NCBI GenBank assembly: GCA_002104905.1 | Contig: MCFE01000113.1 | Span: 1 to 64,000 of the forward strand | Source of the DNA: Basidiobolus meristosporus CBS 931.73 | Lineage: Eukaryota > Fungi > Basidiobolomycota | Direction: 5' to 3' | Length of the DNA: 64,000 nucleotides | In this document: piece by piece, positions 39,232-45,959 of the stretch | Layout: every line of letters begins with the position of its first letter | How positions within the stretch are numbered: the stretch's first letter is position 1 | Made by a program: the position numbers and the translations under genes | Notes under the pieces: generated by a model | What the model was told of the DNA's origin: nothing | Seen by the model: the letters and a program-made list of their open reading frames with translations, nothing else | Databases searched by the model: none

Positions 39232-40250
39232 TTATTGTTGGGAACGAGCGAAAGCAGCCTTCTTTTGCTCGACCTTGTTGCGGCGTTGCTTGAGGTTGAG
39301 CTTGACTTTGTGGTAACGCTTGGTCTTCTCTCCTTGAGCGGGCTTCTTCTTCTCGGTGGGCTTGAAGGTAGGATCCTCGCGAATCTTTTGGTGGGCGGCC
39401 TCGTACATCTCTTCGACGTTATCTTCGTTGAGGCCAGCTTCGAGGTACTTGGCGAATTGACGCTTGTACTTGTCCTCATCTTCTTCGGCGAGGTAGCTCA
39501 TGTACTCGGCAACGTGGCCACCATAAAGGTAGCTACGGAGAACTTCAGAGTCCAAAGACTTGGATTCAGCATCATAACCAGGGAAACGGTTCTCGGAGTG
39601 GGGAATGAAGATGCCACCATCGGAGGCACCCTTAAGGGCGGCGAAGACACGGGAACCGGTGGTGGTGCGCTTCAAACCAACATCGAGGAAGGCCTTGAAA
39701 GGACGAGGAGCATCCTCAAGCTCTTCAACAAGAGAGATGGTGCCATCGGCTTCCTCAACACCTTGGTACTTGTCAGCAAGGCCAAGCTTGGTCAAGACAC
39801 GACGAGCTACGAGGAGACCGGTGCAGTAGGCAGCGGAGTAGTTGGTCAAACCAACCTTGACACCGTATCTGGGCAACTCATGGGAGTAGGCGGAGGCCAA
39901 GACGAAGTCACCTTGGATCTTGGCGTAGACGATTTGGCAGATGACGTCGGTGTTGGTGAAACGAACGACCAGTCTGTATTTGGGGGAGTTGTATTTGTTC
40001 TTGGCTTGGACAACAAGTCTCTTACGAGCGTAGTAGTCGGTCTTTCCCTCTGAAACAACCGTGTTAACCCAGCGATATCCCGCGCGGTACATCCACTAGC
40101 ACATACCTCTTCTTCTTCTGTACTTCACTTGGAAGCGCTTGAAGTAAGCTTTATTCTTGACGAGTTTGACGAAAGGCTAGGCAAATCCCAGTTAGAACCA
40201 ATCTATCGCGGCAAGGGGTGCATCCATCGACACCCGTAGACACTTACCAT
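39232..40250 (-). CDS. RPL5: 60S ribosomal protein L5 (uL18); 2 introns
   Basis: M|PFVKLVKNKAYFKRFQVKYRRRR|EGKTDYYARKRL, KYNSPKYRLVVRFTN and ASDGGIFIPHSENRFPGY. Introns 40247-40177 and 40106-40050. Confidence 0.98.
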
Positions 40251-40856
40251 ATTAAGATCAAAGACACCGAGGAGCAAGGAAAGATCCTGGCGCCACCGAT
40301 CAAACAAATTTATATGATGGATGCGGTTTTTTTCATTTCCCTCACCTGTTGATCTATGGGGTGTCGAGGGATCCGATGCAATTCCGTGTAAATCCCAGAT
40401 GGAACATATTTAATACATTGATCCCATCACCCCGTCTGTGGAATGGGTGAGATGCGGGCCAAGATTTTCCCGTAGGACTGCTTCTATGTTGACAATTCGA
40501 TACGGTACCTGCAGCCTCGCAGCAGTGGGATTGTTCGATATGTTTGAGGTTCTAACTGAACATGAAAAACGTCCTGCTTGCATACACCCTGAGCCTCCAC
40601 CGATCTTTTAAAAGCGTGATGCTGGCTAGCCTCTTCTCCCCTTTAGCCGCATACATTTCTTCGTCTTCGTTTTGAATTGTGTTTACCTTAGCTGTTAGGT
40701 ATGTGGTATTTTGAGGGTGCGTACTGGTGCTGAAGTCATAACCCTGATATCTCTCTTAGTGAACGCCATCGCGGATATTCCTTGTATCATACTCATCGCA
40801 ACTAATTCCAAGTACCCTCATTCCAAAGCCCACCGTGGTGCTCTCCTGAATTACCC

Positions 40857-41842
40857 ATGAATGCTCTAAAGCAGGCTTTTTGGAAGCCAAAGCAACCAGA
40901 GAGTATCCCGGAAACCAGTGCGACTTTCCCCCCTCCAGTTTCCTATCTCAGTCGCAACAAATCCTCTGGCGAGCTCGAGGCTCCCAGAGGTCGCACCAAT
41001 CCCACATCCCATAAGGGCTTCTCAACTCTCAACAGCCCCCTCACAAATCCCTTGTCAGCCGCAACCAACTCGAAGAGTTCCCCGTCTTTACCTATCAAGG
41101 GAAACACTCAGGATGGAGAAGATTTTTCGACCTGGGTGCCGTACAAAGCCACAGACAAGGACAATCCCTCAGTAATCACACTAGCAGACAAGTATGTGCA
41201 ACAGGCGATACAGTGCCATGAACACAATCAATTGGAAAAAGCCGCCCACTTCTTTAGGCTTGCCGCTTGTCAAGGATCACCTGTTGGGTTGTTCCTCTAT
41301 GGGATATCGTTGAGGCATGGATGGGTAATGTCAGTTTTCGGGATATATAACATTGGTCGAAAATGGGTAAAGATGAGGGAATACTTGGCTTGCCTATACA
41401 CATGAACCAATATTCTGTGGGATTCACTCAACCAACTCTTTCTTGACTCTAGGGATGTAAAGTGAATCCACAAGTGGCATTTCAATGCCTTCAGAAGGCT
41501 GCAGAGTATGCGGTGTTTGACTTGAACAACCTCACGAACAACACAAACCTCTCGGCGGCCAAGCATGAGTTGGTTCTGGCGATATACGAGCTGGGTGTGT
41601 GTTTTCAGCATGGCTGGGGTGTGTCCAAAAACAAGTCCACCGCTGTGTACTATTTCGAAATCGCTGCCAATTTGGGGGATCCAGACGCCCAGAATGATCT
41701 GGCTTTTTGCTACCTTCACGGACACGGGGTAAGAAAAAACCGCCATAAAGCAGCCAAATATTACCGGATGGCCCACGCCCAAGGGATGGGAGTGGTTGGA
41801 AACAGTTGGATATTTAAAGCAAAGTATGACAATTCTTTTTAG
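40857..41842 (+). CDS. Sel1-like repeat protein (DSF2/Nif1-like); intron 41325-41452
   Basis: LFLYGISLRHGW|GCKVNPQVAFQCLQKAA, IYELGVCFQHGWGVSKN and AQNDLAFCYLHGHGVRKNRHKAAKYYRMA. Confidence 0.9.
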
Positions 41843-42069
41843 TATAGACTGGCTAGAGGACCTCCTTGGATTACTTCATTTTTGTACACTTGTCTTGCCC
41901 CCTATGTATCTTGTTTACTCCATCTTATCCTAGAACGGACTGTTATATCCGTCAACAAACATGTAAAGTTGTCTTTGGTATACATCGCCAAGTTATTGTA
42001 AGAAGATCAGTTGCCAACTGAGCAATAGTGGAATTGGCCAAATGGACTTTATCACCAGCGGAGCAAATT

Positions 42070-42822
42070 CTATTCATTATGTAGCAGTTCTTGGTCGAAA
42101 AGATAAAGTCCAAGTTGATCACGGCCAACACGCTGCAATTGCGTGGTGTAGTGAGCTAGTTCTGATACCATCTGCACCTCCTGAGTCAAGAAGTTTGATC
42201 TAAGGCGAAACGTCAGCGCATTTCAAGTGAAAATAGTGCCTTTGTACGCTTACTTAATAAAATTGACTAGTGCGGGATCCTCTACCTGGAGACCATGGAT
42301 TGAGGTCGCGATTAAGGACTGATTCACCTCTTTTTTTAACGAAAGGCTAGCCTCTGTCTAGCGGGTCAACCAAAAGTTATTCAGCAAGCATTTTACGTGC
42401 CACTTTACCAAATACGCTGTATGCGGACTCCCATTCGGCTTTCGGTGACGCAATGGGAGCCAGTTGAACAACACCACCTCGCTTGTTCTGGTAATCAATA
42501 ATCTTCCAGGCATCTTCGTACTCCTAGTCAATCCCATGGTTTGCGTAAATTTTATGAAGTTTTGTATGCCAGGACAAAGAAAAGTAACCTTGTCCGAGAT
42601 TTTCTTGAAGTATTTTTCCAAGCCCTATGAAAGAAGGTGTGGGTTGAGTTATTGTTCTAGTGCTGAAGTGGTTACCTCCGCGCTAACCGGTAACGCAACG
42701 TCACAGCCTCCAAAGTATGCCGAGGCAGACAGATGAATGTAGTGAGAAGTATACTTGAGAACTATTTGCTGATTAAGCAAGTCCTCTGAAGCGGTGGCAA
42801 AGTTCTGCTTGGCGAGCGACAT
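42070..42822 (-). CDS. Ferritin subunit lacking the ferroxidase centre (L-like), 171 aa, 5 exons; not in the ORF track
   Basis: Exons 42822-42688, 42624-42589, 42523-42409, 42353-42254 and 42199-42070; GT-AG introns of 63, 65, 55 and 54 nt. Spliced product MSLAKQNFATASEDLLNQQIVLKYTSHYIHLSASAYFGGCDVALPGLEKYFKKISDKEYEDAWKIIDYQNKRGGVVQLAPIASPKAEWESAYSVFEASLSLKKEVNQSLIATSIHGLQVEDPALVNFIKSNFLTQEVQMVSELAHYTTQLQRVGRDQLGLYLFDQELLHNE aligns without gaps to the neighbouring ferritin. Confidence 0.88.
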
Positions 42823-43310
42823 GGTTTCCAGAGATCTTATTCGTGGTGAGAGCTGGTTGAGTCAACCCAGCCTTTTAAGCAGCAGTATGATGACGGAGCC
42901 CCCATCCAAATCCCAGTCCTCATATTCAGACTTTCCCATATATGGCAATAGTTGGTCACTTTGTTTTATATATCACAATAATAAGCTGCGTTCCATCAGG
43001 TGAGAGAATCCGTTTTGCAGGAGTTGAATGGGATAGAGAAGTGCGGGACGTCACTGGTCAACCTAATGCGCAAAGAATCCCCATCGCCTATTCACCGGAA
43101 TACCATGGGGATCGCATTTCTTGGGAAATGATAGGTGGAGACTCAGCACTCCCTGGCCAAGCCACTAGAATGTGTGCTACTCAATCCATCGTTAGACATG
43201 CCGATGAAATTTGGTGGTTGGGATTAAGAAACCTGAGAGCCCTCGGTAGCATATAAAGCATTCCTAGGTTCCTTCAGACCTCATTTTCACTCCTCTTGCT
43301 GATCATCAAT
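42823..43310. promoter_or_regulatory. 488-bp divergent (bidirectional) promoter between the two ferritin genes
   Basis: Both ATGs face outward. TATAAAG near 43252 ahead of the plus-strand gene. Confidence 0.6.
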
Positions 43311-43841
43311 ATGTCTCTTGCCAAACAAAACTTTGCCACCGCTTCCGAGGAAGGTATCAACAACCAGATCAACATGGAGTTCACGGCCATGTACACCTAC
43401 ACCTCCATGGCCGCCTACTTCGACAGGGACAACGTCGCGTTGCCTGGCCTAGCGAAATTTTTCCGGGATAGTGCGGAAGAAGAGCGTGAGCATGCACAGA
43501 AACTGATTGACTACCAAAACCAAAGAGGTGGCCGGGTCAACCTTCAGTCGATCCCAAACCCCTCGTGTGAATGGCAGTCTGCGCAGAATGCTGTGGAGGC
43601 AGCCTTGCAGCTCGAGAAAGATGTCAACAAATCCTTGCTGAACCTTCACAACATCTCAGCAGAAAATGGGGACCCGCAGTTCTGCGATTTCATCGAAACC
43701 CACTACCTCACTGAGCAGGTCGAATCCATCAAGAAGATCTCCGACCTGGTGACTCAGCTGAAGCGTGTGGGTGGAGACGGCCTGGGTCTCTATCTTTGGG
43801 ATCGCGAGCTGCTCCATCACGGCACCGCCACTGGTAATTAG
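43311..43841 (+). CDS. Ferritin, H-type with intact ferroxidase centre, intronless, 176 aa
   Basis: NQINMEF..MYTY, AEEEREHAQKLIDYQNQRGG, LQLEKDVN and DFIETHYLTEQVESIK. E23, Y30, E57, E58, H61, E102 and Q136 correspond to human H-chain E27, Y34, E61, E62, H65, E107 and Q141. Confidence 0.97.
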   Translation: MSLAKQNFATASEEGINNQINMEFTAMYTYTSMAAYFDRDNVALPGLAKFFRDSAEEEREHAQKLIDYQNQRGGRVNLQSIPNPSCEWQSAQNAVEAALQLEKDVNKSLLNLHNISAENGDPQFCDFIETHYLTEQVESIKKISDLVTQLKRVGGDGLGLYLWDRELLHHGTATGN

Positions 43842-44565
43842 TGGCTGGTATGATCAATCGCCCTTTTCATATTAGTATGGATTACTAGCTAGCACTGATC
43901 ATTGAGTGTATATATGTTACTATCCGAAATAAACTAACCCTTTCCGCAACATATCAAGAGAGACCTTGTTGGGAAGATGTGCGCTATCGTAGGCAGCGTG
44001 GCATTTTTGGGCCCAGTGACGCCCTTGTTGTGTGTGGGGCCCCGCACAATTTCCCATTGATAAGGTCTCAGATGGCATCTGATTCATTCCTCTGCTTACA
44101 CAAAGCCAATAGAAGCACCCTGTTGAGAATGATTCATGGCAAAGTAAAGGGGCCCCACAAAATTATTATTGGTTGGACGGGTGCATTAACGAGCGACAGG
44201 GCTGATATGCACCATTCAGGACATGTTGACGAGCATGGATTTACTGACCCACTTCACAACCACCCATGTCTCACGAGGGAATGAGGCCGATCAGGTGGAC
44301 ATTCTGGGCACCAATCTCACTTGCGCCATAAAACCCGCGCCTGCACACAGCATCAAGTACTAGAGATAATTAATGTATTAATAGTTATCATCAATATTAA
44401 TCCCCTCGGTTCTGAGGAATGTATGAAGAAGGTGGGTGGACGCACAATGTTAGTAGATTATTCACTGATTCCTTGGGGAGGTTTAGCCAAATTTAGGATG
44501 AATTACATGTGGGGAGGTTTAGGTCTAACATTCATGGATTTACCGGCGGTATGTATGGATGGTGA

Positions 44566-45959
44566 TTAACACTCGTTGTGGCTCTTCTTGGGATGGGTGT
44601 ATGCTAAGCGGTTAGGTAATGTTAGACTGCGGCGGATGTTGTTGGTGATTGGGATGGAGCCAATGATCGTGGGCTCGCACTGGGGATGATGTTGGTAGAT
44701 CACCAACTTGGGCTTCAACTTCTCATGCTCGACAAGGGCGATCTTGAACGTGGCAAGCTCCATCGGCTTGGTCTTATGAATGAGATGCTTCTTCCCTAAC
44801 GACAAGGTGCGGATCAACTGACGGTTCAGCGAGGGCGATGCACTGGTTTTACTCCGTTTTAGAGCTTTCACGTCTGACTGGGTATCTATCTCTAGGGTGG
44901 GCTTCTTGACCGGTATGGGAGGTAGCTCTTTTTGTCTACCAAGCGCATGACGAGCCATGCTCAGACGATCATGGTTTTTGATCAAGCTGGCAACCACGGC
45001 TTGAGAAATCTTGTATTCCTCCGGGCTCAGCTCATGGATCGGGTGGGCCAGAATACAAGGTTGAAATACGCAAGCGAGATTGGTCGTATTCATCAGTGTT
45101 TGCTCCGCTTGCTCGGCGAAGAATGCGAGTAGATCCAGGATGTAGATCAACAAGGCTTGGTGTGCATGTGGTAGATACACCATGGATGCCTGGAATGCTT
45201 TAACTAGCCTCTCTTCGTCCATACGGTACTCATCTACACCCGCTGTCAGTTACACTGGATCGACAATCAGCAGCTTTTGAGGTTGTTCAGGCTTACCATA
45301 GACTTTCCTGAACAGGAAGTACAGCTGGTGGATGATCACCGGTTCTGGTAGACTGTTCAAGTATCGCCGAAGAAGATTGGCTGCATCATGGACCGTGTAA
45401 CTCTCGAAAGTCACATCTCTTCCGAAATCCGGCGCCAGGTCAAAGAGAGCCTGAATCTCATTCACTCGCTTGGCTGAGCCGTTCACACGAAAAATCCCTT
45501 TGGTGGCCTGAGCTGAGCGAACAGTTGGTGGGCGAAGTCATGGGACGGCTCAGAAGTGACGATCCACATACCATGTTTCCGCAGGAACTCGCCACACTTT
45601 ATAATGACAATGGGCATCGTATAGCATAAATAGCCCTCATTTGGTCTGATGTTGATCTTGATTCCCGCGTATCGTATAGAGGATGCGATGGGTGCGCCAA
45701 AGATCGATCTAGGAATCTCTTTAGGGTAAAAGGCTGGGGGCCGGTTAGAGTGGATTTGGTCGATGTGAGGTCGATGGGTCCTACCTTTTTTCGTCCCCCC
45801 TCTTCTGATGGTGAGCTTCCTGGCCGACAGGGTTTTCGTTCTGGTGACCACGTTCTTCCAGCGCTCCTTGATGGTCGGTTTGACCGTTTCGTTTTTCCGG
45901 ACGAAAAATCGGGTAAGCTGCTCCCAATGGGAGCGTTTGGGCCTCTCTTCAGGGGACAT
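44566..45959 (-). CDS. RhoGAP-domain protein; 2 introns; start uncertain
   Basis: IFGAPI, MPIVIIKCGEFLRKH|AQATKGIFRVNGSAKR (arginine finger), VHDAANLLRRYLNSLPEPVI and MNTTNLACVFQPCIL. Introns 45571-45513 and 45296-45234. Confidence 0.9.

What the first reader, a model, noticed from the sequence alone, without database searches (positions are those of the whole stretch)
42070..43841. Head-to-head ferritin pair: an intact H-type gene and a hidden, spliced subunit with a dismantled ferroxidase centre (candidate fungal H/L ferritin system)
Seen in sequence: the minus strand carries a five-exon ferritin (171 aa) that aligns without gaps to the plus-strand ferritin 488 bp away. Its first 13 residues are identical although several codons differ synonymously (TCT/TCG, CTT/CTC, AAA/AAG, CAA/CAG, TCC/TCA). 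All four introns restore the frame and there are no stops, which argues for a maintained gene. At the ferroxidase positions (human H numbering) it has E27K, Y34H, E61K, H65D, E107K and Q141E, with only E62 kept. The three-fold-channel acids D131 and E134 become N and K. Structural motifs (VALPGL, DYQNxRGG, DP, LGLYLxDxELL) are kept. Established knowledge: animal ferritins are heteropolymers of catalytic H and non-catalytic L chains; L replaces the metal site with a Lys-Glu salt bridge; and the Drosophila heavy- and light-chain-homologue genes are arranged head-to-head. Inference: this fungus may have independently evolved a co-regulated catalytic plus non-catalytic ferritin heteropolymer. The vertebrate L nucleation cluster (57/60/61/64) is only partly acidic here (K,D,K,E), so it is not simply a vertebrate-type L chain. 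I am not aware of such a pair being described in fungi, but I cannot search the literature.
Basis: partly seen in the sequence, partly recalled or inferred. Interest (0 to 1): 0.9.

Follow-up and report, generated by a model that had tools for sequence, protein, structure and literature searches.

The report
Fungal ferritin pair, one subunit catalytically dead
In the fungus Basidiobolus, a normal iron-storage (ferritin) gene sits head-to-head with a spliced, expressed and conserved sister gene that has lost its iron-oxidising site, so this fungus probably builds two-subunit ferritin much as animals do, but by a separate evolutionary route.

Summary
The window is Basidiobolus meristosporus CBS 931.73, contig MCFE01000113.1.

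- **The pair:** an intronless 176-aa H-type ferritin (+, 43311-43841) lies 488 bp from a five-exon, 171-aa ferritin (-, 42822-42070). Four GT..AG introns restore the frame.
- **What is lost:** the minus-strand protein has replaced E27, Y34, E61, H65, E107 and Q141, and the three-fold-channel acids D131 and E134.
- **Real and maintained:**
  - GenBank already holds its first 147 aa, across all four introns.
  - An RNA contig from a close relative splices introns 1 and 2 exactly.
  - B. ranarum has a 171-aa orthologue (74% identical) with the same intron positions, the same core losses and the same head-to-head, syntenic pairing.
  - Synonymous sites are saturated, while pN is 0.157.
- **Internal control:** a duplicated locus in the same genome, noted earlier by this scan as s1-209764, keeps H but carries a wrecked copy of this gene.
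- **Origin:** probably not a fresh copy of its neighbour. It shares three of four intron positions, and K134, with a second ferritin class of Mucoromycota.
- **Untested:** co-assembly with H, co-regulation and loss of activity are inferred only. It is not a vertebrate-type L chain.

No paper in the library describes such a pair in fungi.

The parts
42070..42822 (-). Ferroxidase-dead ferritin gene ('L-like', class-b-like): 5 exons, 171 aa
   Evidence: Gene model. The public partial protein ORX98469.1/P0123 equals residues 1-147. The orthologue is P0124.
42688..42822 (-). Exon 1 (ATG at 42822; residues 1-45)
   Evidence: Covered by the spliced RNA contig of run X1.
42625..42687 (-). Intron 1, 63 nt, GT..AG, phase 0
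   Evidence: Removed exactly in the X1 contig. Same position in B. ranarum, Umbelopsis_b and Apophysomyces_b.
42589..42624 (-). Exon 2 (12 codons)
42524..42588 (-). Intron 2, 65 nt, GT..AG, phase 0
   Evidence: Removed exactly in the X1 contig. Shared with B. ranarum only.
42409..42523 (-). Exon 3 (115 nt)
   Evidence: Partly covered by the X1 contig.
42354..42408 (-). Intron 3, 55 nt, GT..AG, phase 1
   Evidence: Implied by the public proteins P0123 and P0124. Position shared with class-b genes. No read evidence.
42254..42353 (-). Exon 4 (100 nt)
42200..42253 (-). Intron 4, 54 nt, GT..AG, phase 2
   Evidence: Implied by P0123 and P0124. Position shared with class-b genes. No read evidence.
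42070..42199 (-). Exon 5 (helix D end, helix E, stop TAG at 42072-42070)
   Evidence: The C-terminus is matched by B. ranarum P0124.
42823..43310 (.). 488-bp divergent intergenic region (presumed promoters of both genes)
42858..42864 (.). TGAGTCA (AP-1/bZIP-type site), 36-42 nt upstream of the L-like ATG, conserved in B. ranarum
   Evidence: That it is a binding site is inference.
43142..43180 (.). Conserved block holding an 18-nt exact match to B. ranarum (43154-43171) with the palindrome TGGC-CAA-GCCA; about 157 nt upstream of the H ATG and 331 nt from the L-like ATG
   Evidence: Longest common substring is 18, against a mean of 8.7 and a maximum of 12 in 200 shuffles, and 5-8 in orthologous introns. 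The core is also kept in paralogous locus L010.
43251..43259 (+). TATA-like ATATAAAGC, about 60 nt upstream of the H ATG, conserved in B. ranarum and L010
43311..43841 (+). Intronless canonical H-type ferritin, 176 aa (P0001)
   Evidence: Pfam PF00210 at 136.7 bits. All ferroxidase and channel residues are intact. Transcript contig present in X1.

Best explanation
The minus-strand gene is a functional, spliced and selectively maintained ferritin subunit. It keeps the ferritin fold and the segments that build the cage, but it has lost the canonical di-iron ferroxidase centre and the acidic three-fold iron-entry residues.

**Shown**
- The gene structure.
- Splicing of introns 1 and 2 in RNA.
- Conservation of the gene, its introns, its core site losses and its head-to-head partner across two Basidiobolus species.
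- Purifying selection.
- A confident ferritin-fold model.

**Inferred**
- It cannot oxidise Fe(II) on its own. The two lysines (27, 107) and two glutamates (62, 141) now at the former metal site probably pair as salt bridges.
- It has the same short N-terminus as H with no targeting extension, so it is made in the same compartment. There it co-assembles with the catalytic H subunit encoded 488 bp away into mixed 24-mers. H supplies oxidation and iron entry, and this subunit tunes stability, iron flux or turnover.

It most likely descends from an old second ferritin lineage of early-diverging fungi rather than from a recent copy of its neighbour.
For: - **Gene model:** frame-restoring GT..AG introns and a gapless alignment to H. 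The public partial protein equals residues 1-147.
- **RNA:** a contig from a close relative (about 97.7% identical) removes introns 1 and 2 at exactly the modelled borders, and an H contig is in the same run.
- **B. ranarum locus L005:** RhoGAP, then H(-) head-to-head with the 171-aa orthologue(+), then Sel1 and RPL5. This is the window's gene order. The intron positions and phases are identical.
- **Selection:**
  - pN/pS is 0.157/0.842 for this gene and 0.027/0.885 for H.
  - Differences by codon position are 42/16/99.
  - Orthologous introns share no more than 7 nt in a row.
- **Site losses shared by both species:** K27, H34, K107, E141 and K134. There are 53 fixed H-to-L switches against 70 columns invariant in all four proteins. 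The invariant columns cluster in the N-terminus, the AB loop, the end of helix B with the BC loop, and the DE turn with helix E.
- **Fold:** AlphaFold2 pLDDT 88.5 with five helices. TM-score is 0.93 and rmsd 1.3 A to H ferritins.
- **Control:** the duplicated locus L010 keeps H (173/176 aa identical) but has lost this gene's start codon, a splice donor and the reading frame.
Against: - No protein-level evidence of any kind was available: no co-assembly, no activity, no iron response.
- Introns 3 and 4 have no read support here, only two independent annotations.
- The RNA run is from a relative, not from the sequenced strain, and its type is only guessed as RNA.
- The subunit is not enriched in inner-surface carboxylates. 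Nucleation positions 57/60/61/64 read K, D, K, E (K, D, E, E in B. ranarum), so it is not a nucleation-specialised L chain.
- K134 at the three-fold channel could hinder iron entry in mixed cages.
- The best-conserved promoter block persists where this gene is dead, so shared regulation is unproven.
- B. ranarum has three further H genes with no such partner, so H clearly works without a linked partner.
Confidence: 0.55

Rival explanations
1. The subunit works on its own, as a homopolymeric cage or smaller oligomer, in a role other than iron oxidation. Examples are a stress chaperone in the manner of brine-shrimp artemin, or a store or buffer for another cargo. On this reading the linkage to H is historical.
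For: - Loss of both the ferroxidase site and the three-fold-channel acids removes everything needed for iron uptake. That goes further than vertebrate L chains.
- It evolves about six times faster than H at non-synonymous sites.
- Related class-b genes in Umbelopsis and Apophysomyces are not next to another ferritin gene.
Against: - The pairing and orientation are conserved between two species whose synonymous sites are saturated.
- The segments that build the two-fold and four-fold contacts remain nearly identical to those of H.
- There is no C-terminal extension and no cysteine enrichment of the artemin kind: 171 aa with 0-1 Cys.
Confidence: 0.25
2. The subunit is still catalytic or metal-binding through a remodelled site. 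Candidate ligands are the fixed histidines at positions 31 and 34 together with E62 and D/Q65. It would handle iron or another metal differently from H.
For: M31H and Y34H are fixed in both species, and E62 is retained. New residues conserved under purifying selection could form a site.
Against: - Two of the replacements are lysines pointing into the old site (E27K, E107K), which disfavours cation binding.
- Position 65 is not fixed (D versus Q), nor is position 61 (K versus E).
Confidence: 0.12
3. It is a decaying duplicate (pseudogene) that happens still to be open.
For: It evolves much faster than H. A second copy in the same genome has indeed decayed.
Against: - The ORF is intact and all eight splice sites are kept in two species with saturated synonymous divergence.
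- pN is 0.157 against pS 0.842, and differences are strongly biased to the third codon position.
- A spliced transcript exists.
- The decayed copy shows what real decay looks like here: start codon lost and five frame-breaking deletions at only about 18% divergence.
Confidence: 0.03

Closest known systems
Vertebrate ferritin L chain (FTL) in H/L heteropolymers
   Same: A ferritin-fold subunit of about 19-20 kDa that has lost the di-iron ferroxidase ligands and has charged residues in the old site. It coexists with a catalytic H subunit in the same compartment.
   Different: - Independent origin: it nests among fungal ferritins.
- A different substitution set. E62 is kept and E107 becomes K, so the classical K62-E107 salt bridge (established knowledge) cannot form as such.
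- The nucleation cluster is not acidic-enriched.
- The three-fold-channel acids D131 and E134, which L chains keep, are lost here.
Insect ferritin Fer1HCH / Fer2LCH
   Same: A catalytic and a non-catalytic subunit gene are arranged head-to-head. That arrangement in Drosophila is established knowledge, and the insect heteropolymer structure is cited in PMC11719527.
   Different: Insect subunits are secreted and carry signal peptides. Both fungal proteins start with the same short cytosolic-type N-terminus. There is no orthology.
Second ('class b') ferritins of Mucoromycota, e.g. Umbelopsis P0137, Apophysomyces P0148, Geosiphon P0089, Mortierella P0080
   Same: - Three of four intron positions and phases are shared with P0137 and P0148.
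- K or R at position 134, with D131 usually lost.
- Shared local motifs.
- Sister position in the tree, with support 89/66.
- Some members have partly lost ferroxidase ligands.
   Different: - Most class-b members keep all ferroxidase ligands, and even the degenerate ones keep E27, Y34 and E107.
- The Basidiobolus protein sits on a long stem (about 1 substitution per site).
- Class-b genes examined in Umbelopsis and Apophysomyces are not paired with another ferritin gene.
Artemin (Artemia ferritin homologue, chaperone)
   Same: A ferritin-fold protein without a working ferroxidase centre.
   Different: Artemin has a cavity-filling C-terminal extension and many cysteines (established knowledge). 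This protein has 171 aa, no extension and 0-1 Cys.

Membership tests
Eukaryotic maxi-ferritin (Pfam PF00210) | Significant match to the Ferritin profile | tested here: met
   P0123 scores 75.9 bits and P0124 80.1 bits, against a 24.5-bit cut-off.
Eukaryotic maxi-ferritin (Pfam PF00210) | Four-helix bundle plus a short fifth helix E | tested here: met
   AlphaFold2 model of P0124: helices at 10-37, 45-71, 91-118, 122-153 and 158-170, pLDDT 88.5. TM-score 0.93 to solved ferritins.
Eukaryotic maxi-ferritin (Pfam PF00210) | Assembly into a 24-subunit cage | not testable with these tools
   There is only indirect support: the loop and helix-E segments are conserved with H.
H-type (catalytic) ferritin | Ferroxidase ligands E27, E62, H65, E107, Q141 and Y34 present | tested here: not met
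   Only E62 is kept. The pattern is K H K E D K Q E in B. meristosporus and K H E E Q K R E in B. ranarum.
Vertebrate L chain | Descent from the vertebrate L lineage | tested here: not met
   It groups with fungal ferritins. The best solved relatives are H-type, invertebrate and plant ferritins.
Vertebrate L chain | K62-E107 salt bridge and acidic nucleation cluster at 57/60/61/64 | tested here: not met
   E62 is kept and 107 is K. The cluster reads K, D, K, E (K, D, E, E in B. ranarum).
Vertebrate L chain | Co-assembles with H in one shell | not testable with these tools
   Needs co-expression or native mass spectrometry.
Insect LCH-type subunit | Head-to-head gene arrangement with the H-type gene | tested here: met
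   Window and B. ranarum L005.
Insect LCH-type subunit | Signal peptide / secretion | tested here: not met
   The N-terminus is identical to that of H for 13 residues, with no extension or hydrophobic leader. This is by inspection of the sequences; no predictor was run.
Fungal class-b ferritin (defined here from the tree) | Shared intron positions and phases | tested here: met
   Three of four are shared (alignment columns 48 phase 0, 99 phase 1, 132 phase 2) with P0137 and P0148. None is shared with the class-a Phycomyces gene. Only one class-a gene was examined.
Fungal class-b ferritin (defined here from the tree) | Basic residue at position 134 | tested here: met
   K134 in both Basidiobolus proteins. 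Every class-b row has K or R there, and every class-a row has E.
Fungal class-b ferritin (defined here from the tree) | Monophyly with class b in a tree | tested here: inconclusive
   It is sister to class b with support 89/66 or 80/20. A clade with the Basidiobolus H genes is not rejected (AU p = 0.335).
Artemin-like chaperone | C-terminal cavity-filling extension, cysteine-rich | tested here: not met
   171 aa, ending where H ends; 1 Cys (B. meristosporus) or 0 Cys (B. ranarum).

The most novel reading that the evidence does not exclude
Early-diverging fungi carry an old second ferritin lineage. It first lost the acidic three-fold iron-entry residues and then, several times independently, lost its ferroxidase ligands: partly in Umbelopsis, Apophysomyces and Geosiphon, and almost completely in Basidiobolus. 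Neoconidiobolus has a similarly dead ferritin in tandem with a canonical one. On this reading, fungal ferritin shells are catalytic/non-catalytic heteropolymers that arose convergently with the animal H/L system, and Basidiobolus keeps the two genes as a conserved divergent pair.
Probability: 0.35. Interest if true: 0.75.

Novelty: new variant of a known kind. Interest (0 to 1): 0.6.

Why it matters
Division of labour between catalytic and non-catalytic ferritin subunits is textbook for vertebrates and insects. [quoted passage not shown] None of the library searches found a fungal H/L-type distinction.

A conserved, expressed, ferroxidase-dead partner in Basidiobolus would be an independent origin of the two-subunit design. 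Its substitution chemistry differs from the animal one, with lysines at 27 and 107 and a closed three-fold channel. That offers a natural experiment on what a non-catalytic subunit is actually for. Basidiobolus is also an occasional human and animal pathogen for which iron handling is relevant.

The claim is directly testable with two small recombinant proteins.

Tried and rejected
- **Pfam on single exon pieces:** uninformative. Two of my references were one base out of frame, and the pieces are too short anyway. I repeated the scan on the whole proteins.
- **Other B. ranarum H loci (L002-L004):** tblastn found no L-like partner. The partner lies only at the syntenic locus L005.
- **More relatives:**
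  - A word-based search with P0124 found only the two Basidiobolus proteins above 50% identity.
  - An exhaustive HMMER search of 1.84 billion representatives did the same; the next hit is 47%.
  - A scan of JGI metagenome contigs gave only generic ferritins of 48% or less.
- **Tree placement:** the long stem leaves it unresolved. Neither a clade with the Basidiobolus H genes (AU p = 0.335) nor one with Neoconidiobolus gene 2 (p = 0.162) is rejected.
- **dN/dS proper:** it could not be computed because pS exceeds 0.75 (saturated). I report pN, pS and codon-position counts instead.
- **Iron-responsive-element-like or other RNA:** an Rfam scan of 41800-44200 gave one chance-level hit, E = 0.41.
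- **The 18-nt conserved block as proof of a shared bidirectional promoter:** rejected as proof, because its core persists upstream of H at L010 where the partner gene is dead.
- **N-terminal identity as a sign of gene conversion:** rejected. The same MSLAKQNF start is found in Phycomyces and Umbelopsis ferritins.
- **Read support for introns 3 and 4:** not obtainable. Only one read-laying run was allowed, and the single run's contig ended inside exon 3.
Full report
**What is there**

The window is the first 64 kb of contig MCFE01000113.1 of Basidiobolus meristosporus CBS 931.73 (GCA_002104905.1). On the plus strand, 43311-43841 is an intronless 176-aa ferritin (P0001). It matches Pfam Ferritin at 136.7 bits and has every ferroxidase and three-fold-channel residue of a catalytic H chain.

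The exons are 42822-42688, 42624-42589, 42523-42409, 42353-42254 and 42199-42070. The introns are 63, 65, 55 and 54 nt, all GT..AG. The CDS is 516 nt and encodes 171 aa. The protein aligns to H without a gap (83/171 identical), and the two start codons are 488 bp apart.

**Is it a real gene?** Four lines of evidence say yes.

- GenBank already holds ORX98469.1, 'soma ferritin, partial', 147 aa. It is exactly residues 1-147 of this model and therefore uses all four introns. The public model merely stops 24 codons early.
- The one public run that held this stretch (X1, 2015, type guessed as RNA, a relative about 2-4.5% diverged) has a 222-nt contig. That contig joins 42522 to 42588 and 42623 to 42687, which removes introns 2 and 1 exactly as modelled. 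Its two listed differences fall on third codon positions and are synonymous. An H contig is in the same run, with 14 of its 16 listed differences at third positions.
- B. ranarum encodes a 171-aa orthologue (KAK9712835.1, P0124, 74% identical) with four introns at identical positions and phases.
- That orthologue sits head-to-head with an intronless H gene in the same neighbourhood as in the window: RhoGAP, H, L-like, Sel1-repeat gene, ribosomal protein L5.

**Selection**

Between the two species, synonymous sites are saturated (pS 0.84 for this gene, 0.89 for H). Orthologous introns share no more than 7 identical bases in a row. Non-synonymous divergence is nevertheless 0.157 for this gene and 0.027 for H. 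Differences by codon position are 42/16/99 for this gene and 12/3/92 for H. The gene therefore evolves about six times faster than H but is clearly under purifying selection.

The same genome supplies a control. It is about 82% identical over 4.5 kb, and its H copy is intact (173/176 aa). The copy of this gene there has lost its ATG and the donor of intron 3, and it carries five frame-breaking deletions. That is what decay looks like in this genome, and the window's copy shows none of it.

**What has been kept and what has changed**

Comparing the H and L-like proteins of both species over 171 columns:

- 70 columns are invariant in all four proteins.
- 53 columns are fixed differences between H and L-like.
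- 42 columns vary only within L-like.
- 4 columns vary only within H.

The invariant columns cluster in the N-terminus, the AB loop (VALPGL), the end of helix B with the start of the long BC loop (IDYQN.RGG), the EW.SA turn, and the DE turn with helix E (LGLYL.D.EL). From general knowledge of ferritin structure, these are the parts that make the two-fold and four-fold contacts.

The fixed differences include E27K, Y34H, E107K, Q141E and E134K. Positions 61, 65, 131 and 140 are changed but not fixed. The loss of the catalytic site therefore predates the split of the two species.

An AlphaFold2 model of the B. ranarum protein is a standard ferritin subunit (pLDDT 88.5, five helices). It superposes on solved H ferritins at TM-score 0.93 and rmsd 1.3 A. 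Both proteins are acidic (pI 5.4 against 4.9 for H). The L-like protein has no N- or C-terminal extension and at most one cysteine.

**Where it came from**

The L-like pair forms a fully supported clade on a long stem of about one substitution per site. With a Neoconidiobolus sequence added, it is sister to a clade of second ferritins of Mucoromycota that I call class b. That clade includes Mortierella, Endogone, Glomeromycotina, Umbelopsis and Apophysomyces copies. Support is only 89/66, and a clade with the Basidiobolus H genes is not rejected (AU p = 0.335).

Two independent characters favour the class-b link.

- Three of the four introns lie at the same alignment column and phase as in the Umbelopsis and Apophysomyces class-b genes. 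None matches the one class-a gene examined, from Phycomyces.
- Every class-b protein has K or R at position 134, where class a has E.

I therefore read the gene as the Basidiobolus member of an old second lineage, not as a recent copy of its intronless neighbour. This is an inference of moderate strength, because only one class-a gene structure was checked. The identical 13-residue N-terminus is a family-wide feature, not gene conversion.

**Breadth**

No other protein above 50% identity to the L-like subunit exists in the word-indexed search, in an exhaustive HMMER search of 1.84 billion cluster representatives, or in JGI metagenome contigs.

Ferroxidase-site erosion is nonetheless not unique to Basidiobolus.

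- Class-b proteins of Umbelopsis (E62N, H65S, Q141R), Apophysomyces (E61Q, E62Q, H65R, Q141R) and Geosiphon (H65R, Q141R) are partly degenerate.
- Neoconidiobolus thromboides has two tandem intronless ferritin genes. One is canonical. The other reads S, F, E, E, L, D, E, Y at the eight ferroxidase-centre columns and H, K at positions 131/134.

**Regulation**

The intergenic regions of the two species align poorly, apart from a few blocks.

- A 39-nt block at 43142-43180 holds an 18-nt exact match that includes the palindrome TGGC-CAA-GCCA. Shuffled sequences give a longest shared substring of 8.7 on average and 12 at most.
- A TATA-like element lies about 60 nt before the H start.
- A TGAGTCA site lies about 40 nt before the L-like start.

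The palindromic core is also kept upstream of H at L010, where the partner gene is dead. It is therefore at least an H-promoter element and cannot by itself prove shared control. An Rfam scan found no structured RNA element.

**How it most likely works**

*Shown:* this is a maintained, spliced, transcribed ferritin-fold subunit without the canonical catalytic and iron-entry residues, genetically paired with a catalytic one in two species.

*Inferred:*

- The two lysines and two glutamates now in the old metal site neutralise each other, as the K62-E107 bridge does in mammalian L chains (established knowledge).
- The subunit is made in the same compartment as H.
- It enters mixed shells with H, where it modulates stability or iron traffic.

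I put this at about 0.55. The main rival is a stand-alone, non-oxidising role (0.25). It is favoured by the loss of the three-fold acids, which vertebrate L chains keep, and by the lack of extra nucleation carboxylates. A remodelled metal site using H31, H34 and E62 is possible (0.12). A decaying duplicate is effectively excluded (0.03).

**Comparison with what is known, and novelty**

The gene works like an L or LCH subunit but is a member of neither family. It has a fungal origin, a different substitution chemistry and no signal peptide. It is a ferritin by profile and by fold.

The library searches found nothing on catalytic versus non-catalytic ferritin subunits in fungi. Reviews say only that ferritin occurs in some early-diverging fungi and that its function there is unknown (PMC4133162, PMC10616654). 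The library lacks most subscription journals, so an older biochemical report cannot be excluded.

I rate it a new variant of a known kind, with interest 0.6.

Noticed in passing
L010:4867-5503 (GCA_002104905.1 MCFE01000029.1): A duplicated copy of the whole locus (RPL5, Sel1, ferritin pair, RhoGAP), about 82% identical. It keeps an intact H gene (ORY05024.1) but carries an unannotated, broken copy of the L-like gene: start codon lost, the intron-3 donor deleted, and five frame-breaking deletions.
   Followed up: yes
L008:1069-1599 and L008:3001-3525 (Neoconidiobolus thromboides MU626332.1): Two tandem, same-strand, intronless ferritin genes 1.4 kb apart. One is canonical (P0010). The other is a very divergent ferritin with a dismantled ferroxidase site and H/K at positions 131/134. 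This is a second case of a catalytic gene linked to a dead one in a zygomycete-grade fungus.
   Followed up: partly
P0137, P0144 (Umbelopsis), P0148 (Apophysomyces), P0089 (Geosiphon), P0153, P0164: A second ferritin class in Mucoromycota lacks the acidic three-fold-channel residues throughout, and in some genera has partly lost ferroxidase ligands (for example E62N/H65S/Q141R). The Umbelopsis and Apophysomyces genes are not next to another ferritin gene.
   Followed up: partly
L002, L003, L004 (B. ranarum): Three further H-type ferritin genes with no L-like partner nearby; the two with a complete called model (L002, L003) are intronless. Those two lie downstream of a cyclin gene, which suggests segmental duplication of H alone.
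   Followed up: partly
window 42070-42145: The public gene model (ORX98469.1) ends at 42145 and is flagged partial. The reading frame runs on for 24 more codons to a TAG at 42072-42070, matching the full-length B. ranarum protein.
   Followed up: yes
window 42482-42829 and 43300-43673: The contigs of run X1 differ from the window by about 2.3% (L-like) and 4.5% (H). They are much closer to the window than to the paralogous locus L010 (82%). The run therefore comes from another strain or a close species, or from an unassembled allele.
   Followed up: no
window 42070-42822 versus 43311-43841: Third-position GC is 0.68 in H but 0.51 in the L-like gene (0.40 versus 0.34 in B. ranarum). This suggests stronger codon bias, and possibly higher expression, for H.
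   Followed up: no
window 41184-41830 and 44968-45704: The flanking genes are a Sel1-repeat protein (173 aa) and a RhoGAP-domain protein (205 aa), and a ribosomal protein L5 gene overlaps window 39311-40769 and runs further upstream. This order is conserved in B. ranarum and in the paralogous locus.
   Followed up: partly
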